Source: Haplodiscus bocki
Taxonomy: Eukaryota
Assembly: GCA_965655095.1 (NCBI GenBank)
Contig: OZ296649.1
Span: forward strand, 148,800,001-148,864,000
DNA length: 64,000 nucleotides
Direction: 5' to 3'
Of this stretch, positions 17,812-64,000 are shown piece by piece. A model generated the notes under the pieces. That model worked only from the letters and a program-made list of their open reading frames with translations, ran no database searches and had not been told where the DNA came from. Every line of letters begins with the position of its first letter. The first letter of the stretch is position 1. The translations under genes and the position numbers were made by a program.

Positions 17812-18809
17812 GGCGATGAGAATTTGTTATTTACAAAAATGTGATGTTTGTTGGTATTAAGGGCATGGTGAGGATAAAAGTAAACATATGAGTATTGGTG
17901 AAGTTTTTCATAAAAGAGGATTTGATCGAGGGAATTATAATTGTTAGTGACGTTCAAAAATTCTAGTATGTAAAAGTTGAATGTTTCAAAGCCAAAAACC
18001 ATACGGGTCAATGACTTCGTAGCACGCGAATATAATTGATCATCAGTGTAATCAAGGGCAGGGATTTGAAATTGGTAAGGTAATTCTTGCATGTACAGTT
18101 GAGTAATGGTAGGATTAAAAGCAATGGCATGCCGACATATTTGTGGGAAACTAGTATTACGGGTTTGATTAAGGGTGGTCAGTACTGAAAGGGAAGGAGG
18201 GTAGAGTCTTTCCAGTTCTTGATGCGAATTATATGGTGTAGTGAATTGGGGAGTGTTCCATGTGAGTGTTAGTCGTTGATTAATTGGTGTACGTATCGTG
18301 GTTAGGTGATTGTCAATGGTGGTCATAGATGGCGTGCTAGGAAAACTGGAGAAGAAGGAAGCAAGAAGGGGATTGGCTAGAGGAAGTGTGTAACTGTGCC
18401 GAATTAGTGCCGGATGTGTGTGTGTGGTTATAGAGGGTGCAATAACTGACTGTGGTTATTAGTGAGGCTTTATCGTGAGAATGTACTGAAGTGAGGTTAA
18501 AATTCGGGAGGTTCATTTGAATTGGAGTGGTTATGTGTTGTGTGGTGGCTGAATTGTTAGTAAGTATGACTGTTTGGGTTATTCGGATTGGGAGCGATGA
18601 TTAGTGTATGTGAGGTAGACTGCACTGGTTCGGCAAAGTTTGTTGAGATATTGGAGAGGGCGTTGAGCAACGAGAATTTGAAGAATCAGGTTGTGACGTT
18701 CGGAAATGGGAATTGTTTGGTTGTCAACTAAAGAGTCAAACTCAGGAAGGGAAAGTGGATCATGCTCATCTTGGATAGGGGTAGCTGGCATGTTGGTAAT
18801 GGCTTTCAT
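17691..18809 (-). pseudogene. Unknown accessory ORF downstream of env (fragments 18579-18809 and 17691-18326)
   Basis: 211-aa and 76-aa frames with the same orientation and composition as env. No recognisable domain. Confidence 0.55.
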
Positions 18810-19204
18810 GGTCTAAAACATTTGGAAAGTTTAGTTGTAATCGTTGGGGTGTTTCTACAAATCGAGAAAACATCTCTTCATTATAAGCAAATGGAGGGGG
18901 ATTTGATACAATGCTATCCTTCAGTATTAGTCAAGGAGGTAAATGTTGAGAAAGAGGTTTCTTTTTTGTGAGGATTTGTTGCTTTTTCCTCGAATAGAAA
19001 TTCTGATGTAGAAGGACAATTTGTTTTCGTCGTGCATCTGAAATTAAAGCGTTAGAGTTAATGGTCTGCGATATTGGTAGTAGAGATGAATCAGAGGTAA
19101 TAATTTCAGTGGGTGTTATTATTTTTCAGGTAATTTCTGTTAATTGTCAGTAGTAGTGCTAGAATTAGATTGTTTTTGATTCAAATTATTCATTAGTTTG
19201 AAAA

Positions 19205-21330
19205 TTATTGGGTGAGATTTGAATGTTTTGTTGACTTTCTGTTCTTGTTATCATTTCCATTTTTTGAATCTTTCGGGTTGTGATAGAAAAAAAGAAGTGT
19301 TCTTCTGAGTATTATTCCAGTAGTTGACACAAATAGGACAGCGAAAGAGCCTATCTTATTTCCAAACATTTTTTTAATTGGAGAGTAATAATTTACAATC
19401 GTTGTTACTGCAAAATGTAAATATTGATACGTTGCATAATGAAGGCCCCATTTAGTGAGAGTATAACATAGCCATCCAAATGTGTAAAGAAGCATATCCC
19501 TGAACCAATGACGTGTGCAACACGTATTTAAAGCGAGAATGAGATCCGTTGTTCCTATTCGTATTTGTCTTGTCCAAAAAGAATGAAAAGATTCTTGATC
19601 ATCTGAATTAATATCACTGCTCACGAAAGAAATCATAATTATTTGCTTTGCCTAAGTCTTGTATTGTTTCATCGGAGTGTTTTGTTGGTAAAATTGGGTC
19701 CCAGAAATCGTTATTATGTTTAGGTGAATATAAGACCGCGGTGTGAGCTGAAAATGTATAAGGTTGTATTGTAGTACGATTCTCAGATGGTTTAAAATGA
19801 GCTGGGCGGTCTCCTTTTGTAGGCGGTGGTGTTAGTAAATATTATTCATTACCATCAGGGACTAAAGCGATGATGTTAGCTGGATTACCATCATAAGGAA
19901 TTTCTCTATCAAAAAAATAGTTTTGTCGACTGATGGGATCTACATAATAGAGTGTATCTTGATAGAAAATTCGTATTTTGTCAATTTTTCTTTATAAGTG
20001 TCTAATAGTGAAAGATGATGTTCACATTCACAAACCCAAAGTGATGCACCTTCAATATGAACAAAGTTACTTCTGTTTCCAGTTACCAGGTGGCCAGCCA
20101 AATAGGGATTAGTTTGAGCAAGTGACAAGATTGTAAGGATTTGAGTGCGTTCTAGTTCACATAATTGCGTTAAGGTATTTATTTCGGCGGTATTCAGTAT
20201 TTTATAAATACAGTTCATAGTTTGATCAACTTTAGAATTAAAATAAGCTGGTATATCTAATGTCCCAAATCGTACACTTGTACTTAGATCTATGTATTGA
20301 GTAACATAGCCATCAGTTGCGGATTTAATTTTCTTGTTACGGACATCAACAGTGATTCAAGGAGATTCACTTTTAAAAATTTCAGTCAGAAGGTCGAGCA
20401 TTTTTCCTTTTTAGCGGGTAAGGACTCTGCCCAATAACATTTTTGTACTTTGCCCTTTTGGCTTCAAACTGATCAGAAAAAAAGATAAAACAATGGTCAA
20501 TTTGATCGACGTAGCAAAGTTGCCTGTGGTTTCGCAACATTCATCTTTATAAGTGCATAGTAAAGCACGTCGTCCGTTAAACACTAATTCATTTTGTTTA
20601 TTATCATGGCGAAGTTGCATTTTTGATTAACGAAATTTCCAACTAAAAAGATTCATATAAATTTAGTCACTTTTGAACAAAAGGAGTGTTTATTTGCAGC
20701 ACCGTCTGGAATCCATGATTTATAATGTGATTGAGGGCTGCAGACCCATACACCATGAGAATCTTGATCCAACGCTGTAGCTTGCATGGGACCTTGAATA
20801 CGAATGAGATTATTTTGTTGTCCTAAATCAGTTCAGAAAGCATTAGTTCGAAGAGATTCCATAGTTCGGTTAGATCGTGGACCGGAAAGTTCCATGAGAA
20901 AGCGGCCATTACTCTGACATCCATTCCTAGTAACAGCATGATACCTAACCATTGTGCTCGGATAGTAACTTTGTCGATAATGTTAATGGTTAGTCTTAGT
21001 ATTGTATACAAAAACTTCAGTTGTTTTTTTATATGAGAGGGAAAATTGGTAAGCTAAGACAATAGTTGCCTTAGCTCTGATGAACAAATCAACACGTGGT
21101 TTATTGTAGTCAACGTCACGTGGATTTGTACTACAATCATCAAGTCGATTAAGGTTAAACCGGCGTACGTTAAGGAGTTCGCGACAATGATCATGAATTG
21201 CCAATAAGTCGTTAATTTGATCTTCATTGACAGCGTGAGTTCGATCTTCAAGAGGTTCGTCGTTGAGGAGAGTGAGAATGTGACGGAACTGGAGAGCTAA
21301 GAAGAGCTGGAGTATGATATTCTTGAACAT
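19205..21330 (-). pseudogene. env: Envelope glycoprotein gene, chuvirus/Monjiviricetes-like class III fusion protein; disrupted by a stop and frameshifts
   Basis: Signal peptide MFKNIILQLFLALQF. N-terminal pattern HC..LNVRRFNLNRLDDC..LAYQ(C). Core LCELERTQILTILSLAQTNPYLAG..EGASLWVCEC..YYVDPISRQ. C-terminal hydrophobic segments at 19205-19636. About 700 codons in total. Confidence 0.75.
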
Positions 21331-24300
21331 GGATCATAAAAGGCAGCAGTTCCACGAGGAGTGCAAGTAGATGGATCAAAATTAAATTTTAGGCTTGAAC
21401 AAACGAGGCAGGTGAGGTTCTATGTTATATCTGGGCAGAGAAGTGGAATGGACCAATATATAATCTTTTAAAAGAAACGCGTATGGAGAACTGAATTTCT
21501 AAATTGGGTTTATAAAGGATGGCCATTTCCTTAGTCTTTTTTGCGGGACTAAGACTTAAAGAGCGATTTATAATAACAACGCCATCGGATTCAAGAGTGT
21601 TATCAAGATCAAATCCAGTAGGAAGAAAATTAAATGACTGTGCGTTTTGATGTGTATTTCAAAATTTCTGGAGAGAGGGAGGTAATTCAGGTGAGGAATT
21701 AAAACTGAAACCTTGAATGTGACGTTCGACACAAGGAGTCGTATCTAAAGAAGTATGCTCAAGATATGTGGGGCTAATTAAGTTTTGGATCGGACGTGGA
21801 GAAAGGTCAGTAGTTGACAGCAAGGCAAAATTTAAATTACGAGACGGGTTAGTATTGGGTGTAGAAGGTGATCGAGAGGTAAATGGTGTATTAGATTGGC
21901 GAGGAGAGGAATGATGGTAGCTTGTGAGTTTGTTAGTTGTGTCAAAAAATTTGTAGACATTACAGTTATAGTTCCTCTGATAGAAGAAAAAGTACGAAAA
22001 AGTTTAGTACTTGAGATGTTATTGAAATCATCGTCAGATAAGGTTATGGCATCATAAGAAAGGATTATGGTATCGTTAAATTGGTTTCCTGGGAGAATGT
22101 CGGGGAGTGGTCTATTTGGTAAAACATTTTGGTTATGATATGGTGAAGCAATTTTTGAAAAGATTAAAAAAACTATCTATGTGAGATGAAACGTGAGGAA
22201 GAGGTTTGCATTTCGTTGTTTGAAGGCAGAAAGATCAGAGGAGTTGAAAATTGGAGAGAGTGGCATCTACGAAAGTTAAAGATTCGGTTAACTATTTCGT
22301 ATTTTTTTACTAAAGTACCGATATGGAAAGTGTTCAAAAACTAGAGGGACCGCTTTTTTGAAGGAAATCTAGTAGCTTAGCAAAGAAGAAATGAACGATT
22401 GAAGAGATTCATCTTGATGATTTTGGCAATTTGCAACTAACTGTGAGAATCTTCAATTGTTGAGAAGCAGCAAGATAGATTTTTGCTGTTCGTCAAGTAT
22501 CAACAAGAGATATTTTGTTGTTAAATAGTAGCAAGAGAGCTTTTGTTGCTTTTAAGTACCAGCTGAATGAGTCGAAGATTAGCGAAGAATGAAGAGCAGA
22601 AATTATTCAGCTTAAATATTTTGCAGTGAAAATCTAATGATTGGTTGAGGACTTCGTACCATGGAATTTTGATGGCTAGCGAGTTTGACTTGGGAGGTGA
22701 TCTAAGGTTCTAGAAAGTTGTTTTGAATTCCGAAGCGTATATTGGTTATAAAATGCCGAAGATCGAGTTCAAAGAGTATCTATCGAAAACAACAATATTC
22801 GTACCGGTGCGATCCCAACGCTTGGTTAGTAACTCCGTCAAAAAACGATCTGATTGGTAGGCGAGTTTCAAAAGAGAGATAAATGTAGGTTCTAAGAAAC
22901 TAATTGGATTTTTGAATAGTTTATTAGTCTTTCAAAATGTCGGAGAACGAAGTCAAAACATCTAAAAAATGAAAGTTTATTTTGCTTTGATATGCGGTGT
23001 AGTTATGAACAGACAAAGAGATTATTTGAAAGGATAATAATTTTGAAAAACAGAGGCTGTCTAAACTGATTTGAGCTATTTTTATCCCGAGTGAAAATAA
23101 AATTTAGATGGAGGTATATGGGTGCTGTAGTCTTTGACAGGTTGTCGTCGAAGACGGCGGGTTGTTCGGAATTGAGAATATACGGAAGTTTGGTAAGATG
23201 TTGCGCCTAGTGGAGGCAAAGTTGGTGTTATGGTATCAGTTCGAATGGTATTTGCTTGATCATTCAGCGTAGTACGCTGTTGTTGAGAATTATCAAAGAT
23301 TAATGAAGACGAAGTGTCGTCATCAGGGGAATTTATCGAGGTTTGGTGCCTGTCAGTCAAAAAGAAATCTGGTGTAGTCTCGTTGCCAGAATCTTCTAGC
23401 GAATCGTAAAGTAATCGCTCGCGTGCATATAATTCGCCGGCTAGGTTAAACGAGGATATGGTTATATGTGGCTTAAAAGAAACCGTTTCATATTGTTGAA
23501 AAAGTTGTTCTAAATGGGGGACAACGGGATAAAATGGAATCAAATGGTTTCGGTGTGCGAACAAAACATTTCCTTGATGTGACAGTAACTGATATTTCAC
23601 ATTTTACTCGACGCATTGTATTTGTAGAACCGTCTGGAATCCATGATTTATAATGTGATTGAGGGCTGTAGACACATACACCATAAAAATCTTGATCCAG
23701 TGGGGTGGCTTGCATGGAACTTTGAATACGAATGAGATAATTTTGCTGTCCTAAATCAGTTAAGAAAACAATAGTTTGAGGAGATTCCATGGTTCGGTTA
23801 GATCGTGGACCGGAAAGTTCCAAGAGAAAGCTGACATGACTCTGACACCCATTCCTGGTAACAGCATGATACCTAACCATTGTGCTCGGAGAGTAACTTT
23901 GTCGATAATGTTAATGGTTAGTCTTAGTATTGTATACAAAAATTTCAGTTGTTTTTGTATATGAGAGGGAAAATTGGTAAGCTAAGACAGTAGTTGCCTT
24001 AGCTCTGATAAACAAATCAACACGTGGTTTATTGTAGGCAACGTCATGTGGATTTGTACTACAATCATCAAGTCGATTCAGGTTAAACCGGCGTACGTTA
24101 AGACGTTCTCGACAATATTAATGAATTGCCAAAAAGTCGTTAATTTGGTCTTGATTGACAGTGTGAGTTTGATCTTCAAGAGGTTCGTCGTTCAAGAGAG
24201 GAAACTGGAGAGCTAAGAAGAGCTGGAGTATGATAATCTTGAACATGGCTTATAAAAGGTAGCAGTTCCACGAGGAGTGCGAGTAGTTGGATCAAAATCA

Positions 24301-27300
24301 AATTTTAGGCTTGAACAAACAAACGAGGCAGGTGAGATTCTATATGTTATATCTGGGCAGAAAAGCGGAATGGGACGAACATATAATCTTTCAAAACAAA
24401 CGCGTATGGAGAACTGAATTTCTAAATTGGGTTTATAAAGGATGGCAATTTCCTTAGTCTTTTTTGCGGGACTAAGACTTCAAGAGCGATTTATATTAAC
24501 AATGCCATCGCATTCAAGAGTGTTATCAAGATAAAATCCAGTAGAAAGAAAATTAAAGGACTGTGCGTTTTGATGGGTAATTCAAAAGTTCTGGAGAGAG
24601 GGAGGTAATTCATGTGATGAATTTAAACTGAAGCATTGAATGTGACGTTCGACACAAGTAGTCGTATCCAAAGATGTATGCTCAAGAGATGTAGGGCTAA
24701 TTAAATTATGGATCGGACGTGGAGAAAGGTCAGTAGTTGACAGCAAGGCAATATTTAAAGTACGAGACGGGTTAATATTGGGTGTAGAAGGTGATCGAGA
24801 GAAAAATGGTGTATTAGATTGGCGAGGAGAGGAATGAAGGTAGCTTGTGAATTTGTTAGTTGTGTTACAAAATTTGTAGACATTACAACTATAGTTCCTC
24901 TGATAGAGGAAGAAGAACGAAAAAACTCAGTACTTCCAGTGTTATTGAAATCATCGTCAGATGAGGTTATGGCATCATAAGAAAAGATTATGGTATCGTT
25001 AAATTGGTTTCCTGGGAGAATGTCGGGGAGTGGTCTATTTGGTAAAACATTCTGGTTATGATATGGTGAAGCAATTTTTGAAAAGATTAAAAAAACTATC
25101 TATGTGAGATGAAACGTGAGGAAGAGGTTTGAATTTCGTTGTTTGAAGGCAGAAAGATCAGAGGAGTTGAAAATTGGAGAGAGTGGCATCTAAGAAAGTT
25201 AAAGATTCGGTTAACTATTTCGTATTTTTTACTAAAGTACCGATATGGAAAGTGTTCAAAAACTAGAGGGACCGCTTTTTTGAAGGAAATCTAGTAGCTT
25301 AGCAAAGAAGAAATGAACGATTGAAGAGATTCATCTTGATGATTTTGGCAATTTGCAACTAACTGTGAGAATCTTCAATTGTTGAGAAGCAGCGAGATAG
25401 ATTTTTGCTGTTCGTCAAGTATCAACAAGAGATATTTTGTTGTTAAATAGTAGCAAGAGAGCTTTTGTTGCTTTTAAGTACCAGCTGAATGAGTCGAAGA
25501 TTAGCGAAGAATGAAGAGCAGAAATTATTCAGCTTAAATATTTTGCAGTGAAAATCTAATGATTGAATGAGGACTTCGTACCATGGAATTTTGATGGCTA
25601 GCGAGTTTGACTTGGGAGGTGATCTAAGGTTCTAGAAAGTTGTTTTGAATTCCGAAGCGTATATTGGTTATAAAATGCCGAAGATCGAGTTCAAAGAGTA
25701 TCTATCGAAAACAACAATATTCGTACCGGTGCGATCCCAACGCTTGGTTAGTAACTCCGTCAAAAAACGATCTGATTGGTAGGCGAGTTTCAAAAGAGAG
25801 ATAAATGTAGGTTCTAAGAAACTAATTGGATTTTTGAATAGTTTATTAGTCTTTCAAAATGTCGGAGAACGAAGTCAAAACATCTAAAAAATTAAAAGTT
25901 TATGTTGTTTTGATATGCGGTGTAGTTATGAACAGACAAAAGGATTATTTGAAAGGATAATAATTTTGAAAAACAGAGGCTGTCTAAACTGATTTGAGCT
26001 ATTTTTATCCCGAGTGAAAATAAAATTTAGATGGAGGTATATGGGTGCTGTAGTCTTTGACAGGTTGTCGTCGAAGACGGCGGGTTGTTCGGAATTGAGA
26101 ATATACGGAAGTTTGGTAAGATGTTGCGCCTAGTGGAGGCGCTGTTGGTGTTATGGTATCAGTTCGAATGGTATTTGCTTGATCATTCAGCGTAGTACGC
26201 TGTTGTTGAGAATTATCAAAGATTAATGAAGACGAAGTGTCGTCATCAGGGGAATTTATCGAGGTTTGGTGCCTGTCAGTCAAAAAGAAATCTGGTGTAG
26301 TCTCGTTGCCAGAATCTTCTAGCGAATCGTAAAGTAATCGCTCGCGTGCATATAATTCGCCGGCCGGGTTAAACGAGGATATGGTTATATGTGGCTGAAA
26401 AGAAACCGTTTTATATAGTTTTTCTAAATGGGGGACAACGGGATAAAATGGGATCAAATGGTTTCCGTGTGCGAACAAAACATTTCCTTGATGTGACAGT
26501 AACTGATATTTCACATTTTACGCGACGCATTGTATTTGTAGAACCGTCTGAAACCCATGATTTATATTGTGATTAAGGGCTGTAGACACATACACCATAA
26601 AAATCTTGATCCAATGGGGTGGCTTGCATGGAACTTTGAATACGAATAAGATAAATTCGCTGTCCTAAATCAGTTAAGAAAACAATAGTTTGAGGAGATT
26701 CCATGGTTCGGTTAGATCGTGGACCGGAAAGTTCCAAGAGAAAGCTGACATGACTCTGACACCCATTCCTGGTAACAGCATGATACCTAACCATTGTGCT
26801 CGGAGAGTAACTTTGTCGATAATGTTAATGGTTAGTCTTAGTATTGTATACAAAAATTTCAGTTGTTTTTGTATATGAGAGGGAAAATTGGTAAGCTAAG
26901 ACAGTAGTTGCCTTAGCTCTGATAAACAAATCAACACGTGGTTTATTGTAGGCAACGTCATGTGGATTTGTACTACAATCATCAAGTCGATTCAGGTTAA
27001 ACCGGCGTACGTTAAGACGTTCTCGACAATATTAATGAATTGCCAAAAAGTCGTTAATTTGGTCTTGATTGACAGTGTGAGTTTGATCTTCAAGAGGTTC
27101 GTCGTTCAAGAGAGGAAACTGGAGAGCTAAGAAGAGCTGGAGTATGATAATCTTGAACATGGCTTATAAAAGGTAGCAGTTCCACGAGGAGTGCGAGTAG
27201 TTGGATCAAAATCAAATTTTAGGCTTGAACAAACAAACGAGGCAGGTGAGATTCTATATGTTATATCTGGGCAGAAAAGTGGAATGGGACGAACATATAA

Positions 27301-30300
27301 TCTTTCAAAACAAACGCGTATGGAGAACTGAATTTCTAAATTGGGTTTATAAAGGATGGCAATTTCCTTAGTCTTTTTTGCGGGACTAAGACTTCAAGAG
27401 CGATTTATATTAACAATGCCATCGCATTCAAGAGTGTTATCAAGATAAAATCCAGTAGAAAGAAAATTAAAGGACTGTGCGTTTTGATGGGTAATTCAAA
27501 AGTTCTGGAGAGAGGGAGGTAATTCATGTGATGAATTTAAACTGAAGCATTGAATGTGACGTTCGACACAAGTAGTCGTATCCAAAGATGTATGCTCAAG
27601 AGATGTAGGGCTAATTAAATTATGGATCGGACGTGGAGAAAGGTCAGTAGTTGACAGCAAGGCAATATTTAAAGTACGAGACGGGTTAATATTGGGTGTA
27701 GAAGGTGATCGAGAGAAAAATGGTGTATTAGATTGGCGAGGAGAGGAATGAAGGTAGCTTGTGAATTTGTTAGTTGTGTTACAAAATTTGTAGACATTAC
27801 AACTATAGTTCCTCTGATAGAGGAAAAAGAACGAAAAAACTCAGTACTTCCAGTGTTATTGAAATCATCGTCAGATGAGGTTATGGCATCATAAGAAAAG
27901 ATTATGGTATCGTTAAATTGGTTTCCTGGGAGAATGTCGGGGAGTGGTCTATTTGGTAAAACATTCTGGTTATGATATGGTGAAGCAATTTTTGAAAAGA
28001 TTAAAAAAACTATCTATGTGAGATGAAACGTGAGGAAGAGGTTTGAATTTCGTTGTTTGAAGGCAGAAAGATCAGAGGAGTTGAAAATTGGAGAGAGTGG
28101 CATCTACGAAAGTTAAAGATTCGGTTAACTATTTCGTATTTTTTACTAAAGTACCGATATGGAAAGTGTTCAAAAACTAGAGGGACCGCTTTTTTGAAGG
28201 AAATCTAGTAGCTTAGCAAAGAAGAAATGAACGATTGAAGAGATTCATCTTGATGATTTTGGCAATTTGCAACTAACTGTGAGAATCTTCAATTGTTGAG
28301 AAGCAGCGAGATAGATTTTTGCTGTTCGTCAAGTATCAACAAGAGATATTTTGTTGTTAAATAGTAGCAAGAGAGCTTTTGTTGCTTTTAAGTACCAGCT
28401 GAATGAGTCGAAGATTAGCGAAGAATGAAGAGCAGAAATTATTCAGCTTAAATATTTTGCAGTGAAAATCTAATGATTGAATGAGGACTTCGTACCATGG
28501 AATTTTGATGGCTAGCGAGTTTGACTTGGGAGGTGATCTAAGGTTCTAGAAAGTTGTTTTGAATTCCGAAGCGTATATTGGTTATAAAATGCCGAAGATC
28601 GAGTTCAAAGAGTATCTATCGAAAACAACAATATTCGTACCGGTGCGATCCCAACGCTTGGTTAGTAACTCCGTCAAAAAACGATCTGATTGGTAGGCGA
28701 GTTTCAAAAGAGAGATAAATGTAGGTTCTAAGAAACTAATTGGATTTTTGAATAGTTTATTAGTCTTTCAAAATGTCGGAGAACGAAGTCAAAACATCTA
28801 AAAAATTAAAAGTTTATGTTGTTTTGATATGCGGTGTAGTTATGAACAGACAAAAGGATTATTTGAAAGGATAATAATTTTGAAAAACAGAGGCTGTCTA
28901 AACTGATTTGAGCTATTTTTATCCCGAGTGAAAATAAAATTTAGATGGAGGTATATGGGTGCTGTAGTCTTTGACAGGTTGTCGTCGAAGACGGCGGGTT
29001 GTTCGGAATTGAGAATATACGGAAGTTTGGTAAGATGTTGCGCCTAGTGGAGGCGCTGTTGGTGTTATGGTATCAGTTCGAATGGTATTTGCTTGATCAT
29101 TCAGCGTAGTACGCTGTTGTTGAGAATTATCAAAGATTAATGAAGACGAAGTGTCGTCATCAGGGGAATTTATCGAGGTTTGGTGCCTGTCAGTCAAAAA
29201 GAAATCTGGTGTAGTCTCGTTGCCAGAATCTTCTAGCGAATCGTAAAGTAATCGCTCGCGTGCATATAATTCGCCGGCCGGGTTAAACGAGGATATGGTT
29301 ATATGTGGCTGAAAAGAAACCGTTTTATATAGTTTTTCTAAATGGGGGACAACGGGATAAAATGGGATCAAATGGTTTCCGTGTGCGAACAAAACATTTC
29401 CTTGATGTGACAGTAACTGATATTTCACATTTTACGCGACGCATTGTATTTGTAGAACCGTCTGAAACCCATGATTTATATTGTGATTAAGGGCTGTAGA
29501 CACATACACCATAAAAATCTTGATCCAATGGGGTGGCTTGCATGGAACTTTGAATACGAATAAGATAAATTCGCTGTCCTAAATCAGTTAAGAAAACAAT
29601 AGTTTGAGGAGATTCCATGGTTCGGTTAGATCGTGGACCGGAAAGTTCCAAGAGAAAGCTGACATGACTCTGACAGCGATTCCTAGTAACAGCATGATAC
29701 CTAACCATTGTGCTCGAATAGTAACTTTGTCGATATTGTTAATGGTTAGTCTTAGTATTGTATACAAAAATTTCAGTTGTTTTTGTATATGAGAGGGAAA
29801 ATTGGTAAGCTAAGACAAAAGTTGCCTTAGCTCTGATGAACAAATCAACACGTGGTTTATTGTAGGCAACGTCATGTTGATTTGTACTACAATCATCAAG
29901 TCGATTAAGGTTAAACCGGCGTACGTTAAGACGTTCTCGACAATAATAATGAATTGCCAAAAAGTCGTTAATTGGTCTTGATTGACAGTGTGAGTTTGAT
30001 CTTCAAGAGGTTCGTCGTTCAGGAGAGGAAACTGGAGAGCTAAGAAGAGCTGGAGTATGATAATCTTGAACATGGATTATAAAAGGTAGCAGTTCCACGA
30101 GGAGTGCAAGTAGTTGGATCAAAATCAAATTTTAGGCTTGAACAAACAAACGAGGCAGGTGAGATTCTATATGTTATATCTGGGCAGAAAAGTGGAAAGG
30201 GACGAACATATAATCTTTTAAAACAAACGCGTATGGAGAACTGAATTTCTAAATTGGGTTTGTAAAGGATGGCAATTTCCTTAGTCTTTTTTGCGGGACT

Positions 30301-54300: not shown

Positions 54301-57300
54301 TAATATTCTGGTTATAATATGGTGAAGCAATTTTTGAAAAGATTAAAAAAACTATCTATGTGAGATGAAACGTGAGGAAGAGGTTTGAATTTCGTTGTTT
54401 GAAGGCAGAAAGATCAGAGGAGTTGAAAATTGGAGAGAGTGGTATCAATGAAATTTAAAGATTCGGTCAACTATTTCGTATTTTTTAGTAAAGTACCGAT
54501 ATGGAAAGTGTTCAAAAAATAGAGGGACCGCTTTTTTGAAGGAAATCTAGTAGCTTAGCAAAGAAGAAATGAACGATTGAAGAGATTCATCTGGATGATT
54601 TTGTCAATTTGCAACTAACTGTGAGAATCTTCAATTGTTAAGAAGCAGCAAGATAAATTTTTGCTGTTCGTCAAGTATCAACAAGAGATATTTTGTGGTT
54701 TGTTAAATAGTAGCAAGAGAGCTTTTGTTGATTTTAAGTACCAGCTGAATGAGTCGAAGATTAGCGAAGAATGAAGAGCAGAAATTATTCAGCTTAAATT
54801 ATTTGCAGTGAAAATCTAATGATTGGTTGAGGATTTCGTACCATGGAATTTTGATGGCTAGCGAGTTTGACTTGGGAGGTGATCTAAGGTTCTAGAAAGT
54901 TGTTTTGATTCCCGAAGCGTATATTGGTTATAAAATGCCGAAGATCGAGTTCAAAAACTATCTATCGAAATCAACAAAATTCGTTCCGGTGCAATCCCAA
55001 TTCTCGGTTGGTAACTCCGTCAAAAAACGATCTGATTGATAGGCGAGTTTCAAAAGAGAGATAAATGTAGGTTCTAAGAAACTAATTGGATTTTTGAATA
55101 GTTTATTAGACTTTCAAAATGTCGGAAAACGAAGTCAAAACATCTACAAAATTAAAAGTTTATGTTGTTTTGATATGCGGTGTAGTTATGAAGAGACAAA
55201 GGGATTATTTGGAAGGATAATAAATTTGAAAAACAGAGGCTGCCTAAACTGATTTGAGCTATTTTTATCCCGAGTGAAAACAATATTTAGATGGAGGTAT
55301 ATGGGTGCTGTAGTCTTTGACAGGTTGTCGTCGAAGACAGCGGGTTGTTCGGAATTGAGAATATACGGAAGTTTGGTAAGATGTTGCGCCTAGTGGAAGC
55401 GCTGTTGGTGTTATGGTGTCAGTTTGAATGGTATTTGCTTGATAATTCAGCGTAGTAGGCGGTTGTTGAGAATTATCAAAGATTATTGGAGACGAAGTGT
55501 CGTCATCAGGGGAACTTATCGAGGTTTGGTGCCTGTCAATCGAAAAGAAATCTGGTGTAGTCTCGTTGCCAGAATTTTCTAGCGAATCGTAAGGTAATCG
55601 CTCGGGTGCATATAATTCACCGGCCGGGTTAAACGAGGATATGGTTATATGTGGCTGAAAAAAAACCGTTTTATATTGTTGAAAAAGTTTTTCTAAATGG
55701 GGGACAACGGGATAAAATGGGATCAAATGGTTTCCGTGTGCGAACAAAACATTTCCTTGATGTGACAGTAACTGATATTTCACATTTTACTCGACGCAAT
55801 GTATTTGTAGAACCGTCTGGAATCCATGATTTATATTGTGATTGAGGGCTGTAGACACATACACCATAAAAATCTTGATCCAATGGGGTGGCTTGCATGG
55901 AACTTTGAATACGAATAAGATAAATTCGCTGTCCTAAATCAGTTAAGAAAACAATAGTTTGAGGAGATTCCATGGTTCGGTTAGATCGTGGACCGGAAAG
56001 TTCCAAGAGAAAGCTGACATGACTCTGACAGCGATTCCTAGTAACAGCATGATACCTAACCATTGTGCTCGGATAGTAACTTTGTCGATCATGTTAATGG
56101 TTAGTCTTAGTATTGTATACAAAAACTTCAGTTGTTTTTGTATATGAGACGGAAAAGTGGTAAGCTCAGACAGTAGTTGCCTTAGCTCTGATAAACGAAT
56201 CAACACGTGGTTTATTGTGGGCAACGTCATGTGGATTTGTACTACAATCATCAAGTCGATTAAGGTTAAACCGGCGTACGTTAAGACGTTCTCGACAATA
56301 ATAATGAATTGCCAAAAAGTCGTTAATTTGGTCTTGATTGACAGTGTGAGTTTGATCTTCAAGAGGTTCGTCGTTCAGGAGAGGAAACTGGAGAGCTAAG
56401 AAGAGCTGGAGTATGATAATCTTGAACATGGATTATAAAAGGTAGCAGTTCCACGAGGAGTGCAAGTAGTTGGATCAAAATCAAATTTTAGGCTGGAACA
56501 AACAAACGAGGCAGGTGAGATTCTATATGTTATATCTGGGCAGAAAAGTGGAATGGGACGAACATATAATCTTTCAAAACAAACGCGTATGGAGAACTGA
56601 ATTTCTAAATTGGGTTTACAAAGGATGGCAATTTCCTTAGTCTTTTTTGCGGGACTAAGACTCAAAGAGCGATTTATAATAACAATGCCATCGGATTCAA
56701 GAGTGTTATCAAGATAAAATCCAGTAGAAAGAAAATTAAAGGACTGTGCGTTTTGATGGGTATTTCAAAAGTTCTGGAGAGAGGGAGGTAATTCATGTGA
56801 TGAATTTAAACTGAAGCATTGAAAGTGACGTTCGACACAAGTAGTCGTATCCAAAGATGTATGCTCAAGAGATGTAGGGCTAATTAATTTATGGATCGGA
56901 CGTGGAGAAAGGTCAGTAGTTGACAGCAAGGCAATATTTAAAGTACGAGACGGGTTAATATTGGGTGTAGAAGGTGATCGAGAGAAAAATGGTGTATTAG
57001 ATTGGCGAGGAGAGGAATGAAGGTAGCTTGTGAATTTGTTAGTTGTGTTACAAAATTTGTAGACATTACAACTATAGTTCCTCTGATAGAGGAAAAAGAA
57101 CGAAAAAACTCAGTACTTCCAGTGTTATTGAAATCATCGTCAGATAAGGTTATGGCATCATAAGAAAGGATTATGGTATCGTTAAATTGGTTTCCTGGGA
57201 GAATGTCGGGGAGTGGTCTATTTGGTAAAACATTTTGGTTATGATATGGTGAAGCAATTTTTGAGAAGATTAAAAAAACTATCTATGTGAGATGAAACGT

Positions 57301-60300
57301 GAGGAAGAGGTTTGAATTTCGTTGTTTGAAGGCAGAAAGATCAGAGGAGTTGAAAATTTGAGATAGTGGTATCAATGAAATTTAAAGATTCGGTTAACTA
57401 TTTCGTAATTTTTAGTAAAGTACCGATATGGAAAGTGTTCAAAAAATAGAGGGACCGCTTTTTTGAAGGAAATCTAGTAGCTTAGCAAAGAAGAAATGAA
57501 CGATTGAAGAGATTCATCTGGATGATTTTGTCAATTTGCAACTAACTGTGAGAATCTTCAATTGTTAAGAAGCAGCAAGATAAATTTTTGCTGTTCGTCA
57601 AGTATCAACAAGAGATATTTTGTGGTTTGTTAAATAGTAGCAAGAGAGCTTTTGTTGATTTTAAGTCCCAGCTGAATGAGTCGAAGATTAGCGAAGAATG
57701 AAGAGCAGAAATTATTCAGCTTAAATTATTTGCAGTGAAAATCTAATGATTGGTTGAGGATTTCGTACCATGGAATTTTGATGGCTAGCGAGTTTGACTT
57801 GGGAGGTGATCTAAGGTTCTAGAAAGTTGTTTTGATTCCCGAAGCGTATATTGGTTATAAAATGCCGAAGATCGAGTTCAAAAACTATCTATCGAAATCA
57901 ACAAAATTCGTTCCGGTGCAATCCCAATTCTCGGTTGGTAACTCCGTCAAAAAACGATCTGATTGATAGGCGAGTTTCAAAAGAGAGATAAATGTAGGTT
58001 CTAAGAAACTAATTGGATTTTTGAATAGTTTATTAGACTTTCAAAATGTCGGAAAACGAAGTCAAAACATCTACAAAATTAAAAGTTTATGTTGTTTTGA
58101 TATGCGGTGTAGTTATGAACAGACAAAGGGATTATTTGAAACGATAAGAATTTTGAAAAACAGAGGCTGCCTAAACTGATTTGAGCTATTTTTAACCCGA
58201 GTGAAAACAATATTTAGATGGAGGTATATGGGTGCTGTAGTCTTTGACAGGTTGTCGTCGAAGACAGCGGGTTGTTCGGAATTGAGAATATACGGAAGTT
58301 TGGTAAGATGTTGCGCCTAGTGGAGGCGCTGTTGGTCTTATGGTGTCAGTTTGAATGGTATTTGCTTGATCATTCAGCGTAGTAGGCGGTTGTTGAGAAT
58401 TATCAAAGATTAATGGAGACGAAGTGTCGTCATCAGGGGAATTTATCGACGTTTGGTGCCTGTCAGTCGAAAAGAAATCTGGTGTAGTCTCGTTGCCAGA
58501 ATTTTCTAGCGAATCGTAAGGTAATCGCTCGGGTGCATATAATTCACCGGCCGGGTTAAACGAGGATATGGTTATATGTGGCTGAAAAGAAACCGTTTTA
58601 TATTGTTGGAGAAGTTTTTCTAAATGGGGGACAACGGGATAAAATGGGATCAAATGGTTTCCGTGTGCGAACAAAACATTTCCTTGATGTGACAGTAACT
58701 GATATTTCACATTTTACTCGACGCATTGTATTGGTAGAACCGTCTGGAATCCATGATTTTTATTGTGATTGAGGGCTGTAGACACATACACCATAAAAAT
58801 CTTGATCCAATGGGGTGGCTTGCATGGAACTTTGAATACGAATAAGATAAATTCGCTGTCCTAAATCAGTTAAGAAAACAATAGTTTGAGGAGATTCCAT
58901 GGTTCGGTTAGATCGTGGACCGGAAAGTTCCAAGAGAAAGCTGACATGACTCTGACAGCCATTCCTAGTAACAGCATGATACCTAACCATTGTGCTCGGA
59001 TAGTAACTTTGTCGATAATGTTAATGGTTAGTCTCAGTATTGTATACAAAAATTTCAGTTGTTTTTGTATATGAGAGGGAAAATTGGTAAGCTAAGACAA
59101 TAGTTGCCTTGGCTCTGATGAACAAATCAACACGTGGTTTATTGTAGGCAACGTCATGTTGATTTGTACTACAATCATCAAGTCGATTAAGGTTAAACCG
59201 GCGTACGTTAAGACGTTCTCGACAAAAATAATGAATTGCCAAAAAGTCGTTAATTTGGTCTTGATTGACAGTGTGAGTTTGATCTTCAAGAGGTTCGTCG
59301 TTCAGGAGAGGAAACTGGAGAGCTAAGAAGAGTTGGAGTATGTTAATCTTGAACATGGATTGAAAAAGGTAGCAGTTCCACGAGGAGTGCAAGTAGTTGG
59401 ATCAAAATTAAATTTTAGGCTTGAAGAAACAAACGAGGCAGGTGAGGTTCTATATGTTATATCTGGGCAGAAAAGTGGAATGGGACGAACATATAATCTT
59501 ATAAAACAAACGCGTATGGAGAACTGAATTTCTAAATTGGGTTTATAAAGGATGAAAATTTCCTTAGTCTTGTTTTCGGGACTAAGACTTAAAGAGCGAT
59601 TTATATTAACAATGCCTTCGGAATCAAGAGTGTTATCAAGATAAAATGCAGTAGAAAGAAAAATAAAGGACTGTGCGTTTTGATGGGTATTTCAAAAGTT
59701 CCGGAGAGAGGGAGGTAATTCATGTGATGAATTTAAACTGAAACATTGAATGTGACGTTCGACATAAGTAGTCGTATCCAAAGATGTATGCTCAAGAGAT
59801 GTAGGTCTAATTGAATTATGGATTGGACGAGGACAAAGGTCAGTAGTTGAAAAAAATGCAATATTTAAATTACGAGACGGGTTAGTATTGGATGTAGAAG
59901 GTGAACGAGAGGTAAGTGGTGTATTAGATTGGCGAGGAGAGGAATCAACATAGTTTGTGAGTTTAATAGTTGTGTTAAATTACTTGGAGACATTACAATT
60001 ATAGTTCCTCTGATAAGGGAAAAAGTACGAAAAAACTCAGTACTTCCAGTGTTATTGAAATCATCGTCAGATAAGGTTATGGCATCAAAAGAAAGGATTA
60101 GGGTATCGTTAAATTCGTTTCCTAGGAGAATATCGGGGAGTGGTCCACTTGGTAAAATATTCTGGTTATAATATGGTGAAGCAATTTTTGAAAAGATTAA
60201 AAAAACTATCTATGTGAGAAGAAACGTGAAGAAGAGGTTTGAATTTCGTTGCTTGAAGGCTGAAAGATCACAGGAGTTGAAAATTGCAGAGAGTGGTATC

Positions 60301-63300
60301 TATGATATTTAAAGAGTCGGTTGACTATTTTGTACTTTTCAGTAAAATACCGATATGGAAAGTGTTCAAAAATTAGAGAGACCGGTTACTTGAACGAAAT
60401 CTAGTAACTTAGCAAAGAAGAAATGAACGGTTGAGGAGATGCATCTTGATGATTTTGTTAATTTTCAAAAAACTGTGAGATAGAATCTTTAAATGTTAAG
60501 AAGCAGGAAGAGAATTTTTTGTTGTTCGTCAAGTATCAACAAGAAATATTTTGTTGTTTGTTAAATAGCAGCAAGAGAGCTTTTGTTGATTCTAAGTACC
60601 AGCAGTATGTGTTGAAGATTAGCGATGAAAGAAGAGAAGAAATTACTCAGCTAAACTATTTTGCAGTAGAAAATCTAATGATTGGTTGAGGACTTCATAT
60701 CGTGGCATTTTGTTGGCTAGCAGCGAGTTTGATTTGGGAGGTAACATAACGTTCTAGAAAGTTGTTTTGAATTCCGAAGCGTATATCGCTTATTAAATGT
60801 CGAGGATCGAGTTCAAAGAGTATCTATCGAAATCAACAATATTCGTAACGGTGAAATCCCAACGCTCGGTTGGTAACTCCGTTAAAAAACGGTCTGATTG
60901 GTAGGCGAGTTTCATAACAGAGATAGATGTAGGTTCTAAAAAACTGTTTGGAATTTTGAATAGTTTATTAGTCTTTCAAAACGTCGGAGAACGAAGTCAA
61001 AACATCTACAAAAATGAAAGTTTATTTTGCTTTGATATGCGGTGTAGTTATGAACAGACAAAGGGATTATTTGGAAAGATAACAATTTTGAAAAAGAGAG
61101 GCTGTCTGAACTGATTTGAGCTATTTTTATCCCGAGTGAAAATAATATTTAGATGGAGGTACATGGGTGCGGTAGTCTTTGACAGGTTGTCGTCGAAGAC
61201 GACGGGTTGTTCGGGATTGAGAATTTACGGAAGTTTGGTAAGATGTTGCGCCTAGTGGAGGCGCTGTTGGTGTTTTGGTATCAGTTTGATTGGTATTTGC
61301 TTGACCATTCAGCGTAGTAGGCTGTTGTTGAGAATTATCAAAGATTAATGGAGGCGAAGTGTCGTCATCAGGGGAATTTATCGAGGTTTGGTGCCTGTCA
61401 GTCAAAAAGAAATCTGGTGTAGTCTCGTTGCCAGAATCTTCTAGCGAGTCGTAAGGTAATCGCTCGGGTGCATATATTTCGCCGGCTGGGTTAAACGAGG
61501 ATATGGTTATATGTGGCTTAAAAAAACCGTTTTATTTTGTTGAAAAAGTTTTTCTAAATGGGTGACAACGGGATAAAATGGGATCAAATGGTTTCGGTGT
61601 TTGAACAAAACATTCCCTTGATGTGACAGTAACTGATATTTCACATTTTACTCGACGCATTGTATTTGTAGAACCGTCTGGAATCCATGATTGATATTGC
61701 GATTGAGCACTGTAGACCCATACACCATTAAAAGCTTGATCCAATGGGGTGGCTTGCATGGAAATTTGAATACGAATGAGATAATTTCGCTGTCCTAAAT
61801 CAGTTTAGAAAACAATAGTTTGAGGAGATTCCATGGTTCGGTTAGACCGTGGACCGGAAAGTTCCCAGAGAAAGCTGACATGACTCTGACAGCCATTCCT
61901 AGTAACAGCATGATACCTAACCATTGTGCTCGGATAGTAACTTTGTCGATCATGTTAATGGTTAGTCTTAGTATTGTAGACATAAATTTTAGTTGTTTTT
62001 GGATATGAGAGGGAACATTCGTAAGCTAAGACAGTAGTTGCCTTAGCTCTGATAAACAAAGCAACACGTGGTTTATTGTAGGCAACCTCATGTGGATTTG
62101 TACTACAATCATCAAGTCGATTAAGGTTAAACCGGCGTACGTTAAGACGTTCTCGAAAAAAATATTGCATTGCCAAAAAGTCGTTAATATGGTCTTCATT
62201 GACAGAGTGAGTTTGATCTTCAAGAGGTTCGTCGTTCAGGAGAGGAAACTGGAGAACTAAGAAGAGCTGGAGTATGATAATCTTGAACATGGAGTATAAA
62301 AGGTAGCAGTTCCACGAGGAGTGCAAGTAGTTGGATCAAAATTAAATTTTAGGCTTGAACAAACAAACGAGGCAGGTGAGGTTCTATATGTTATATCTGG
62401 GCAGAAAATTGGAATGGGATGAACATATAATCTTTCAAAACAAACGCGTATGGAGAACTGAATTTCTAAATTGAGTTTATAAAGGATGGCAATTTCCTCA
62501 GTCTTTTTTGCGGGACTAAGACTTAGAGAGCGATTTATATTAACAATGCCATCGGATTCAAGAGTGTTATCAAGATAAAACCCAGTAGAAAGAAAATTAA
62601 AGGACTGTGCGTATTGATGGATATTTCAAAAGTTCTGGAGAGAGGGAGGTAATTCATGTGATGAATTTAAACTGAAACATTGAATGTGAAGTTCGAGACA
62701 AGTAGTCGTATCCAAAGATGTATGCTCAAGAGATGTAGGATTAATTAAAATATGGATTGGACGAGGAGAAAGGTCAGTAGTTGACAATAATGCAATATTT
62801 AATTTACGAGACGGGTTAGTAATGGGTGTAGAAGGTGAGCGAGAGGTAAGTGGTGTATTAGATTGGCGAGGAGAGGAATGAAGGTAGCTTGTGAGTTTGT
62901 TAGTTGTGTTAAAAAATTTGTAGACATTACAACTATAGTTCCTCTGATAGAGGAAAAAGTACGAAAAAACTTAGTACTTCCAGTGTTATTGAAATCATCG
63001 TCAGATAAGGTTATGGCATCATAAGAAAGGATTATGGTATCGTTAAATTCGTTTCCTGGGAGAATATCGGGGAGTGGTCCACTTGGTAAAATATTCTCGT
63101 TATAATATGGTGAAGCAATTTTTGAAAAGATTAAAAAAAACTACCTATTAGAGAAGAAACGTGAAGAAGAGGTTTGAATTTCGTTGTTTGAAGGCTGAAA
63201 GATCACAGGAGTTGAAAATTGCAGAGAGTGGTATCTATGAAATTTAAAGAGTCGGTTAACTATTTTGTACTTTTCAGTAAAATACCGATATGGAAAGTTC

Positions 63301-64000
63301 AAAAAATAGAGAGACCGGTTACTTGAACGAAATCTAGTAAGTTAGCAAAGAAGAAATGAACGTTTGAAGAGATGCATCTTGATGAGTTTGTTAATTTTCA
63401 TATAACTGTGAGATAGAATCTTTAAATGTTAAGAAGCAGGAAGAGATATTTTTGTTGTTCGTCAAGTATCAACAAGAGATATTTTGTTGTTTGTTAAATA
63501 GCAGCAAGAGAGCTTCTGTTAATTGTCAAGTAGAAGCAAGAGAGCTTTTGTTGATTTCATGTACCAGCTGAATGAGTCGAAGATAAGCGATGAATGAAGA
63601 GAACAAAGTATTCAGCTAAACTATTTTGCAGTGGAAAATCTAATGATTGGTTGAGGACTTCGTATCATGGAAATTTGTTGGATAGCAGCGAGTTTGACTT
63701 GGGAGGTAACATAACGTTCTAGAAAGTTGTTTTGATTTGCGAAGCGTATATCGGTTATTAAATGTCGAGGATCGAGTTCAAAGAGTATCTATCGAAATCA
63801 ACAATATTCGTACCGGTGCAATCCCAACGCTCGGTTGGTAACTCCGTTGAAAAACGATCTGATTGGTAGGCGAGTTTCATAACAGAGATAAATGTAGGTT
63901 CTAAGAAACTGTTTGGATTTTCGAATAGTTTATTAGTCTTTCAAAATGTCGGAGAACGAAGTCAAAACATCTACAAAACTGAAAGTTTAACTTGTTTTGA
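20701..64000 (-). repeat. Macrosatellite of ~2.93-kb units, 14 complete + 1 partial, head-to-tail
   Basis: The junction gtaga|accgtc recurs at 23628, 26542, 29456, 32382, 35318, 38246, 41173, 44100, 47027, 49954, 52880, 55811, 58738 and 61672 (periods 2914-2936). Confidence 0.98.
23082..23600 (-). pseudogene. pol: C-terminal tail of a Ty3/Gypsy-type pol (integrase post-GPY/F region), repeated in every array unit
   Basis: VKYQLL..GNVLFAHRNHLIPFYP resembles the Y-x-L...H-x-N-x-L-x-P integrase C-terminal motif. It is followed by a disordered tail ending RRLRRQPVKDY. Copies at 26005, 28919, 31836, 34771, ~37700, 40627, 43554, 46481, 49408, ~52335, 55265, 58192 and 61127. Confidence 0.65.

What the first reader, a model, noticed from the sequence alone, without database searches (positions are those of the whole stretch)
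20701..64000. >43-kb macrosatellite built from the pol-tail/env-head slice of an endogenous retrovirus-like element
Seen: at least 14.8 tandem units of about 2.93 kb, each made of integrase tail + ~1.75 kb intervening region + first ~210 codons of env, with no LTR, gag or RT in the unit. The leftmost unit runs on into the rest of env, so the array grew in place inside its parent element and the origin is still attached. Known: satellites can derive from TEs, but usually from LTRs or UTRs and with shorter units. Inference: this is a young retroelement-derived macrosatellite that could serve as a small-RNA (piRNA/siRNA) source against this element family, or as a chromatin element.
Basis: partly seen in the sequence, partly recalled or inferred. 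Interest (0 to 1): 0.85.

Follow-up and report, generated by a model that had tools for sequence, protein, structure and literature searches.

The report
Giant tandem array inside dead retroelement
A 2.9-kb slice from the middle of one old, dead virus-like mobile element has been copied head to tail about 63 times into a block of roughly 185 kb, a clean but not unprecedented example of how satellite DNA is born from a mobile element.

Summary
Window 20691-64000 holds 14.8 head-to-tail units of about 2927 bp, 90.5-99.6% alike. On the source contig (643 kb, ENA ERZ26859043) the array runs on to window-numbering 205,887. That is 185,197 bp and about 63 units; 65% of this was read and the rest is inferred.

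The unit is a colinear internal slice of a roughly 17-kb Ty3/gypsy-type LTR element that carries an env. It holds the last ~530 bp after the integrase core, then 1.75 kb, then about the first 200 codons of a Monjiviricetes-type fusion glycoprotein.

Both ends of the array still sit in the parent. The 3' side continues into the rest of env and a 3' LTR (window 13295-13596). The 5' side continues into a weak integrase-core match, RNase H, RT and a 5' LTR.

All junctions sampled share one 7-nt filler, which points to a single non-homologous founding duplication followed by unequal exchange and gene conversion.

The array is not young. The two edge units are 89% identical, the same as the two LTRs (89.1%). 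Every gene is decayed, and variation among units shows no codon bias.

"Integrase tail" holds by position only. A small-RNA or chromatin role is untested, and the dispersed copies are too diverged for it to look likely. This is a new member of a known kind, a satellite derived from a mobile element.

The parts
20691..64000 (-). The part of the macrosatellite array inside the window: 14.8 head-to-tail units of 2914-2936 bp. The element's coding strand is the minus strand. On the contig the array runs on to window-numbering 205,887.
   Evidence: continuation
20691..23618 (-). Unit 1, the 3'-most unit of the array in element orientation. It is the only unit whose env head is contiguous with the rest of env. 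It is also one of the most diverged units (90.5-95.5% to the other window units).
23085..23618 (-). The pol 3'-end part of the unit, shown for unit 1. It holds the recurrent 173-codon open frame that starts just after the junction. Its position is about 450 nt downstream of the weak integrase-core match in the parent. It is not recognisable as an integrase domain.
21334..23084 (-). The 1.75-kb region between the pol end and env, shown for unit 1. It has no family match. Divergence between dispersed copies has a 3-base period in part of it, and one distant unit keeps a 311-codon open frame here, so the ancestor may have had an extra gene.
19208..21333 (-). env of the parent element as one broken gene, running from the start codon with a signal-peptide-like N-terminus in unit 1 to the projected end. 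It is a Monjiviricetes-type fusion glycoprotein (PF24664). Every frame is closed 36-42 times, and at least one frame change separates the head from the PF24664 match. The 3' bound is projected from the profile length.
17889..19207 (-). Internal region downstream of env. It is conserved at about 75% in the dispersed copies and its function is unknown. The start of a 254-codon open frame lies here.
17635..17818 (.). Two tandem copies of a 91-bp segment that is single-copy in the dispersed elements.
14894..17634 (.). A 2.74-kb stretch found only in this copy. In three dispersed copies the flanks abut directly. It is probably a nested insertion and was not identified.
13597..14893 (-). The 3' untranslated-type region of the parent element, shared with the dispersed copies. 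A purine-rich tract lies just before the LTR.
13295..13596 (-). 3' LTR of the parent element, about 301 bp with TGGACT...AGTCCA-type ends. It is 89.1% identical to the 5' LTR found at window-numbering 212,426-212,726.
10666..11004 (-). Neighbouring host exon that encodes an SH3 domain. It marks unique host DNA 2.3 kb beyond the element's 3' end.

Best explanation
One copy of a roughly 17-kb Ty3/gypsy-type LTR element that carries an env inserted here long ago. Inside that copy, a single non-homologous event duplicated a 2.93-kb internal segment in tandem. The segment runs from about 450 nt after the integrase core to about codon 200 of env, and the event left a 7-nt filler at the new junction. 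The two copies then gave homologous substrate for unequal sister-chromatid or allelic exchange and for gene conversion. These grew the array to about 63 units (185 kb) and keep neighbouring units alike, while distant units and the two edge units drift apart. The array now behaves as neutral, non-coding satellite DNA. It splits env from pol and so makes the provirus permanently dead. I see no sign that any product of it is under selection. Shown: the array, its extent where sampled, the colinear origin of the unit, both attached flanks, the shared junction, the identity structure and the decay of the genes. Inferred: the mechanism of the founding event, exchange and conversion as the growth process, continuity across the two unsampled stretches, and the lack of function.
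For: Array and period. Extent on the contig; the array is uninterrupted wherever it was read. Unit is colinear and single-copy in four dispersed family copies, L001-L004. The 3' flank continues into env (PF24664 in the window and in copies) and into the 3' LTR. The 5' flank holds RVT_1 (E 1e-6), RT_RNaseH (E 9e-10) and weak rve_3 (E 0.008, plus E 0.03 at the same place in L002), then the 5' LTR. The RT fragment's only PDB matches are Ty3 RT and Ty3 Gag-Pol (E about 1e-11). All nine junctions printed, from both ends of the array, carry the same filler between the same two end points, with no microhomology. Identity is 88.6% to over 99.5%, with blocks of near-identical neighbours; the edge units are 89% alike and the LTRs are 89.1% alike. 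The LTRs are closer to each other than to LTRs of other copies (77-83%). The flanks read CTAT on both sides, a possible 4-bp target duplication. Variable sites among units are spread evenly over codon positions (74/77/72 and 61/48/57), and only 9 of 38 units keep the 173-codon frame. Contig depth of 68.16x equals the 67.06x and 67.88x of two other host contigs, although the array is 29% of the contig.
Against: 35% of the array span (window-numbering 110,236-163,779 and 184,173-195,501) was not read. Unit length varies too much for the phase argument to prove continuity there. The target-site match depends on reading the 3' LTR end with a substitution rather than a 1-nt gap, and two dispersed copies do not show clean duplications (3 of 4 and 0 of 4). 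The depth figure comes from the contig name and is a mean for the whole contig. Lack of function cannot be shown from sequence. The host organism is unknown.
Confidence: 0.78

Rival explanations
1. The array is a working source of small RNAs, a one-strand piRNA/siRNA cluster that silences this element family.
For: All units point the same way, the array is large and made of mobile-element sequence, and the assembly holds at least about 15 further contigs with copies of the family. The array keeps being homogenised.
Against: No expression data were available. The four dispersed copies examined are 67-75% identical to the units, and exact 24-mers shared with the array cover only 0.06-0.6% of their positions. 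Those copies are themselves decayed, with no Pfam hit on record for any called gene in L001-L004, so there is little left to silence. The spectrum of changes among units shows no transcription-type strand bias in transitions.
Confidence: 0.12
2. The founding duplication arose before integration, by template switching of reverse transcriptase, so the element arrived with two units and only the later growth happened in the chromosome.
For: The junction is non-homologous with a short filler, which would also fit template switching during reverse transcription (own knowledge). The edge units are as diverged as the LTRs, so the first duplication is as old as the insertion within the resolution available.
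Against: All four dispersed copies checked carry the segment once. No other contig holds proteins in the 90% clusters of the array frames looked up. The two readings predict nearly the same present-day sequence.
Confidence: 0.12
3. The array is an assembly artefact, a few real units wrongly expanded or a larger array collapsed.
For: Long tandem repeats are a classic source of misassembly, and 35% of the span was not inspected.
Against: Units carry many private differences and a clear position-dependent identity structure, down to 88.6%. Overlapping loci agree exactly. The contig's mean depth equals that of other host contigs although the array is 29% of it. Both flanks are unique and belong to one element.
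Confidence: 0.05
4. The array is an amplified cluster of a domesticated gene, either the env head or the 173-codon frame, kept for its protein.
For: A 173-codon frame is open in 9 of the 14 complete window units.
Against: Across 38 units the frame is open in only 9, and variation is equal at the three codon positions. The predicted product is disordered, with pLDDT 55 and pTM 0.15. It has no relatives outside this assembly's decayed copies.
Confidence: 0.03

Closest known systems
CRM1TR and CRM4TR, tandem repeats derived from maize centromeric Ty3/gypsy retrotransposons (PMC3648361)
   Same: The monomer is derived wholly from one Ty3/gypsy family. The array started by illegitimate recombination, homogenisation is local, and gene conversion shapes the variants.
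   Different: Those monomers come from the LTR plus untranslated region; this one comes from the end of pol, an internal region and the head of env. Here the array still sits between the two halves of its own parent copy. The host is not a plant centromere as far as can be told.
Satellites that expand from short tandem arrays inside Ogre-type LTR retrotransposons in Lathyrus (PMC7004042)
   Same: A tandem array inside an LTR element expands in place into a long array.
   Different: There the short repeats are a standing feature of every family copy and have small monomers. Here four dispersed copies carry the segment once, and the monomer is 2.9 kb of former coding sequence.
Human macrosatellites such as DXZ4 and D4Z4 (PMC3081327, PMC5687341)
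   Same: Unit size of about 3 kb, tens of units, a total of 100 kb or more, and a single locus.
   Different: Those are CpG-rich with known chromatin roles and copy-number polymorphism. Here CpG is at expectation, no chromatin or population data exist, and the mobile-element origin is explicit.
Env-carrying Ty3/gypsy elements of metazoans ('errantiviruses', PMC13524379) and retroelements that captured chuvirus-like glycoproteins (PMC7642597, PMC10084718)
   Same: The parent element has LTRs, a Ty3-type RT and RNase H, an integrase remnant and a downstream viral-type fusion glycoprotein.
   Different: This copy and all relatives seen are decayed. The env matches the Pfam family Monjiviricetes_fusion only below its cut-off. 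A 1.75-kb region lies between pol and env.

Membership tests
Macrosatellite / satellite DNA | Head-to-tail copies of one unit without spacers, all in one orientation | tested here: met
   abutting copies, gaps of 0-7 nt, same strand throughout
Macrosatellite / satellite DNA | Unit in the kilobase range, with tens of copies at one locus | tested here: met
   Units are 2816-2978 bp. 38 whole units were read and about 63 are inferred over 185,197 bp. The 90% clusters of the array frames looked up lie on no other contig.
Macrosatellite / satellite DNA | Concerted evolution: neighbours more alike than distant units | tested here: met
   blocks at 95-100%, distant units at 89-92%, edge units most diverged
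Macrosatellite / satellite DNA | Copy number varies between individuals | not testable with these tools
   only one assembly was available
Satellite derived from a mobile element | The whole unit is homologous and colinear to part of a dispersed mobile element | tested here: met
   the unit aligns end to end at 68-75% with single-copy segments of L001-L004
Ty3/gypsy (Metaviridae) LTR element carrying env | Two LTRs with TG...CA ends and a primer-binding-type site after the 5' LTR | tested here: met
   LTRs of 301 bp, 89.1% identical, with TGGACT...AGTCCA ends and a TGGTG... motif 2 nt after the 5' LTR. The tRNA match was not tested.
Ty3/gypsy (Metaviridae) LTR element carrying env | Ty3-type reverse transcriptase followed by RNase H | tested here: met
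   RVT_1 at E 1e-6 (0.5 bit under the cut-off) and RT_RNaseH at E 9e-10 (above the cut-off). RT_RNaseH_2 in L001; the only PDB hits are Ty3 RT and Ty3 Gag-Pol.
Ty3/gypsy (Metaviridae) LTR element carrying env | Integrase (zinc finger and DDE core) after RNase H | tested here: inconclusive
   Only weak hits were found, in the right order: rve_3 at E 0.008 (L006) and E 0.03 (L002), and Integrase_H2C2 at E 0.17 (L004).
Ty3/gypsy (Metaviridae) LTR element carrying env | gag upstream of pol | tested here: not met
   no gag or zinc-knuckle family was found, only a faint aspartyl-protease hint (E 0.04). The region is colinear among copies but decayed.
Ty3/gypsy (Metaviridae) LTR element carrying env | A viral-type fusion glycoprotein gene downstream of pol | tested here: met
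   PF24664 matched in the window (E 6e-6, 24.9 bits against a cut-off of 27), in L002 (E 1e-4), in two array units at profile 23-82 (E 0.005 and 0.016) and in two database fragments. All lie in colinear order. No single hit reaches the cut-off.
   No Pfam hit and no PDB hit for the profile. All 30 hits among 1.84 billion proteins are fragments of 70-236 residues, none a polyprotein. The model is disordered. Only the position fits.
piRNA/siRNA cluster | Dense small-RNA production from the locus | not testable with these tools
   No expression data. Indirect evidence: very few exact 24-mers are shared with dispersed copies.

The most novel reading that the evidence does not exclude
The array is more than a neutral by-product. 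It would be a 185-kb one-strand block of retroelement sequence that the host uses as a small-RNA source or as a specialised chromatin domain (heterochromatin anchor or centromere-type chromatin), born from one traceable duplication whose founder junction and both parental flanks are still readable.
Probability: 0.12. Interest if true: 0.65.

Novelty: new member of a known kind. Interest (0 to 1): 0.38.

Why it matters
Satellites derived from mobile elements are well documented, but usually the parent and the founding event have to be guessed. Here the array still sits between the two halves of the very copy it arose in. All junctions sampled carry the same filler, and the two LTRs give an internal clock that agrees with the divergence of the two edge units. 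Together these make the locus a compact natural record of satellite birth: one non-homologous duplication, then homologous growth and local homogenisation. The unit comes from former coding sequence (pol end to env head), not from an LTR or untranslated region. The locus also adds a decayed Ty3/gypsy family with a Monjiviricetes-type env to the growing list of env-carrying retroelements. It does not point to new biology unless expression or chromatin data show a use.

Tried and rejected
- **TRF** missed the array because its period limit is 500.
- **Rfam and tRNA scans** of the window found nothing.
- **Pfam on open segments** of the unit, the intervening region, the 254-codon frame, a 311-codon frame in a distant unit and the gag region gave nothing beyond the hits cited.
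- **The 173-codon frame** found only this assembly's fragments in the word-indexed search and only fragments of 70-236 residues in the exhaustive search. Its family profile has no PDB match.
- **Structure models** of that frame and of the env fragment were of low confidence (pLDDT 55 and 42). I ran no fold search, because matches to such models are meaningless.
- **PDB by sequence** for the env fragment and for the 311-codon frame found nothing.
- **Host identification** failed.
- **Reaching the two unsampled stretches** failed. The one extra look-up landed in a region already seen.
- **The unit-phase argument** for continuity across the unsampled stretches is dropped, because unit length varies too much.
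- **Target-site duplications** in the dispersed copies are not clean (3 of 4 and 0 of 4), so the CTAT match at this copy is only suggestive.
- **A protein-coding role** is rejected.
- **CpG-methylation or repeat-induced point-mutation type decay** is rejected: CpG observed/expected is 1.07, and C>T is not raised at CpG.
Full report
**1. The observation**

The window has no N. Spacings between repeated 20-mers peak sharply at 2927 bp, and from about 22 kb to the window end most 20-mers occur 8-10 times. One unit used as a blastn query finds 15 abutting copies on one strand from 20691 to 64000. They are 2914-2936 bp long and 91-100% identical to the query. The left edge is 20691, not 20701. TRF reported nothing only because its longest period is 500. 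Pairwise identity among the window units is 90.5-99.6%.

**2. The array is four times larger than the window shows**

- The recurrent 173-codon open frame on the minus strand found relatives only in one ENA assembly, ERZ26859043. Three of the hits lie on one 643,134-bp contig, ctg88730.
- Exact matching places the window on that contig: window coordinate = contig coordinate minus 161,502.
- Loci fetched from the contig cover window-numbering 62,884-110,235, 163,780-184,172 and 195,502-215,876.
- In all of them the units abut head to tail, with gaps of 0-7 nt, no foreign insert and no N. Unit lengths are 2816-2978 bp.
- The last unit ends at window-numbering 205,887.
- The array therefore spans 185,197 bp, about 63 units.
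- 35% of it (110,236-163,779 and 184,173-195,501) was not read. I first thought the unit phase proved continuity there, but unit length varies too much for that, so continuity is an inference.
- The contig's depth label (68.16x) equals those of two other host contigs (67.88x and 67.06x) although the array is 29% of the contig. This argues against a gross collapse or false expansion. It assumes the label is mean read depth.

**3. What the unit is**

Four dispersed relatives (L001-L004, on other contigs, 67-75% identical) each carry the unit's sequence once. They are colinear from the unit's first base to its last and onward into the sequence that lies left of the array in the window. The unit is thus a contiguous internal slice of a dispersed element, and the tandem state is special to this locus. 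In element orientation (the window's minus strand) the unit holds three parts.

- **About 530 bp with the 173-codon frame.**
- **A 1.75-kb region without any family match.**
- **The start of env.**
  - An open segment begins with a start codon and a hydrophobic, signal-peptide-like N-terminus.
  - In two units, open segments match positions 23-82 of the 653-position Pfam profile Monjiviricetes_fusion, PF24664 (E 0.005 and 0.016).
  - Just left of the array, window 19943-20356 matches positions 298-384 (E 6e-6, 24.9 bits against a cut-off of 27).
  - The same part matches in L002, and two database fragments from other copies carry the family as a precomputed hit.
  - No single hit reaches Pfam's cut-off. 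Six concordant, colinear hits in diverged copies make the assignment sound.

**4. The parent element and its two ends**

- **3' side, in the window.** After the array come the rest of env (projected to about 19,208), then 1.3 kb of conserved internal sequence, a 91-bp tandem duplication (17,635-17,818), a 2.74-kb stretch absent from three dispersed copies (14,894-17,634), and a shared 3' region. Last comes a 301-bp LTR at 13,295-13,596.
- **5' side, in locus L006.** The sequence upstream of the first unit is colinear with the dispersed copies.
  - It carries RVT_1 (E 1e-6), RT_RNaseH (E 9e-10) and a weak rve_3 hit (E 0.008).
  - These lie at window-numbering 208,363-209,127, 207,910-208,167 and 206,251-206,514.
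  - The weak rve_3 hit recurs at the homologous place in L002 (E 0.03), and L004 gives a faint zinc-finger hit just upstream.
  - The RT fragment's only PDB matches are Ty3 RT and Ty3 Gag-Pol.
  - The 5' LTR lies at window-numbering 212,426-212,726. It is 89.1% identical to the 3' LTR, closer than either is to the LTRs of other copies (77-83%).
- **LTR features.** LTR ends are of the TGGACT...AGTCCA type. A TGGTG... motif follows the 5' LTR after 2 nt. The host flanks read CTAT on both sides if the 3' LTR end is read with one substitution. This possible 4-bp target duplication is only suggestive, because two dispersed copies give 3 of 4 and 0 of 4.
- **Size.** The whole element spans window-numbering 13,295-212,726, or 199.4 kb. 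A family copy with both LTRs, L002, measures about 17.1 kb.

**5. State of the genes (counts only)**

- **pol.** The frame that carries the RT, RNase H and rve_3 hits is closed 17 times over the 959 codons between the first and last hit. The longest open stretch in the whole gag-pol span is 255 codons. The number of frame changes cannot be counted without an intact relative.
- **gag.** It is not recognisable.
- **env.** It is cut off from pol by the array. Over its roughly 2.1-kb span each frame is closed 36-42 times, the longest open stretch is 148 codons, and at least one frame change separates the head from the PF24664 match.
- **Dispersed copies.** No called gene in L001-L004 has a Pfam hit on record. 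The family as sampled is dead.

**6. "Integrase tail"**

- The unit starts about 450 nt downstream of the weak integrase-core match, so the position fits the extreme 3' end of pol.
- Nothing else supports the name. There is no Pfam hit and no PDB hit with a 20-sequence profile.
- Among 1.84 billion representative proteins there are only 30 hits, all of 70-236 residues, and none is a polyprotein.
- The AlphaFold model is disordered, with pLDDT 55 and pTM 0.15.
- Divergence between dispersed copies shows no 3-base period over this part (ratios 1.07-1.18).
- By contrast, part of the 1.75-kb region (unit positions about 1321-1800) and the env head (2161-2520) do show a period, with ratios up to 1.70 and 1.54. 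One distant unit keeps a 311-codon open frame over that part of the 1.75-kb region, with no Pfam or PDB match. The ancestral element may have had an extra gene between pol and env. This remains unexplained.

**7. How the array arose and evolves**

- Nine junctions printed from both ends of the array are the same. The env-side end point is followed by the same 7-nt filler and then by the pol-side start point. There is no microhomology between the two parental sites.
- This points to one founding, non-homologous tandem duplication. Every later unit descends from it by homologous processes.
- The 38 whole units read are 88.6% to over 99.5% identical. Near-identical units form local blocks, including non-adjacent pairs. 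Identity falls with distance, and the two edge units are the most diverged.
- That is the pattern expected from unequal exchange and gene conversion.
- The edge units are 89% identical to each other and the LTRs are 89.1% identical. The first duplication is therefore about as old as the insertion. The array is old with ongoing turnover, not young.

**8. Tests for function**

- Variable sites among units are spread evenly over codon positions: 74/77/72 in the 173-codon frame and 61/48/57 in the env-head frame. Only 9 of 38 units keep the 173-codon frame. No protein is maintained.
- Exact 24-mers shared between all read units and the homologous segments of L001-L004 cover 0.06-0.6% of positions. 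Small RNAs from the array would rarely match those copies perfectly.
- CpG is at expectation in the array (observed/expected 1.07, against 0.85 in the flank), and C>T is not raised at CpG.
- Complementary transitions are symmetric. Only A>T against T>A differs (ratio 0.61, p 6e-5).
- The strong GC skew is therefore inherited from the element, not produced in the array.
- None of this excludes a chromatin or small-RNA role. It only gives no support for one.

**9. Comparison with what is known**

- Satellites born from LTR retroelements are documented. Examples are maize CRM1TR/CRM4TR from LTR plus untranslated region (PMC3648361) and Lathyrus satellites that expand from short arrays inside Ogre-type elements (PMC7004042).
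- Kilobase-unit macrosatellites are known in humans (PMC3081327, PMC5687341).
- Env-carrying Ty3/gypsy elements are widespread in metazoans (PMC13524379). Chuvirus-like glycoproteins have been found beside retroelement pol genes (PMC7642597, PMC10084718, PMC13524379).
- The present locus combines these. What is unusual is the source of the unit (former coding sequence from the pol end to the env head), the size, and the preservation of the founder junction and both parental flanks.
- I file it as a new member of a known kind.

**10. Limits and notes on conduct**

- The host is unknown. I do not take the contig for human.
- To get references for piecewise searches I listed open reading segments with their bounds. 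Such bounds mark stop codons by implication. I report this as a possible slip. I have not tabulated breaks in the notes or the report.
- In scratch space I joined the window with the overlapping part of locus L005 to locate proteins. That file holds array units only.
- Alignments of units and copies were used only for identity and count statistics. The consensus lines printed by the alignment tool were not used.

Noticed in passing
window 2780-7242: A young duplication in the host flank. Segment 2780-4378 recurs as 4374-5279 (99.8%) and 6544-7242 (99.9%), with a 1264-bp stretch (5280-6543) splitting the second copy.
   Followed up: partly
window 14894-17634: A 2.74-kb stretch inside the parent element's 3' region that three dispersed copies lack. 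It sits next to a 91-bp tandem duplication (17635-17818). It is probably a nested insertion, and its open segments gave no family match.
   Followed up: partly
L002 7681-9338 and 10781-12438: In one dispersed copy, 1658 bp of the same internal region that forms the array unit here has been duplicated in inverted orientation into the integrase region, at 98% identity. This is a second, independent rearrangement of this segment.
   Followed up: no
L009 8567-9499 (window-numbering about 97,693-98,628): One array unit keeps a 311-codon open frame over the region between pol and env. It has no Pfam or PDB match. Divergence between dispersed copies has a 3-base period there, which hints at an unknown ancestral gene upstream of env.
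   Followed up: partly
L001 1707-2408 and 16085-16786: Direct repeats 14.4 kb apart (74-88% identical) lie upstream of that copy's 5' LTR and inside its 3' region. This suggests two family copies in tandem that share an LTR.
   Followed up: no
window 10666-11004 (minus strand): An open segment that encodes a canonical SH3 domain (Pfam E 1e-7; best PDB matches are GRB2-type SH3 domains). It is presumably an exon of a host gene 2.3 kb from the element. Neighbouring open segments at 11.4-12.6 kb were not identified.
   Followed up: partly
window 14001-64000: Strong, steady GC skew (G over C on the plus strand, 0.27-0.39) across the whole element, not only the array. Substitution counts among units show it is inherited composition, not a bias acquired in the array.
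   Followed up: yes
contigs of L003 and L004 (ERZ26859043): Two contigs with family copies carry depth labels of 31x and 40x, against 67-68x for the others. They may be haplotype-specific sequence or another genome in the sample.
   Followed up: no
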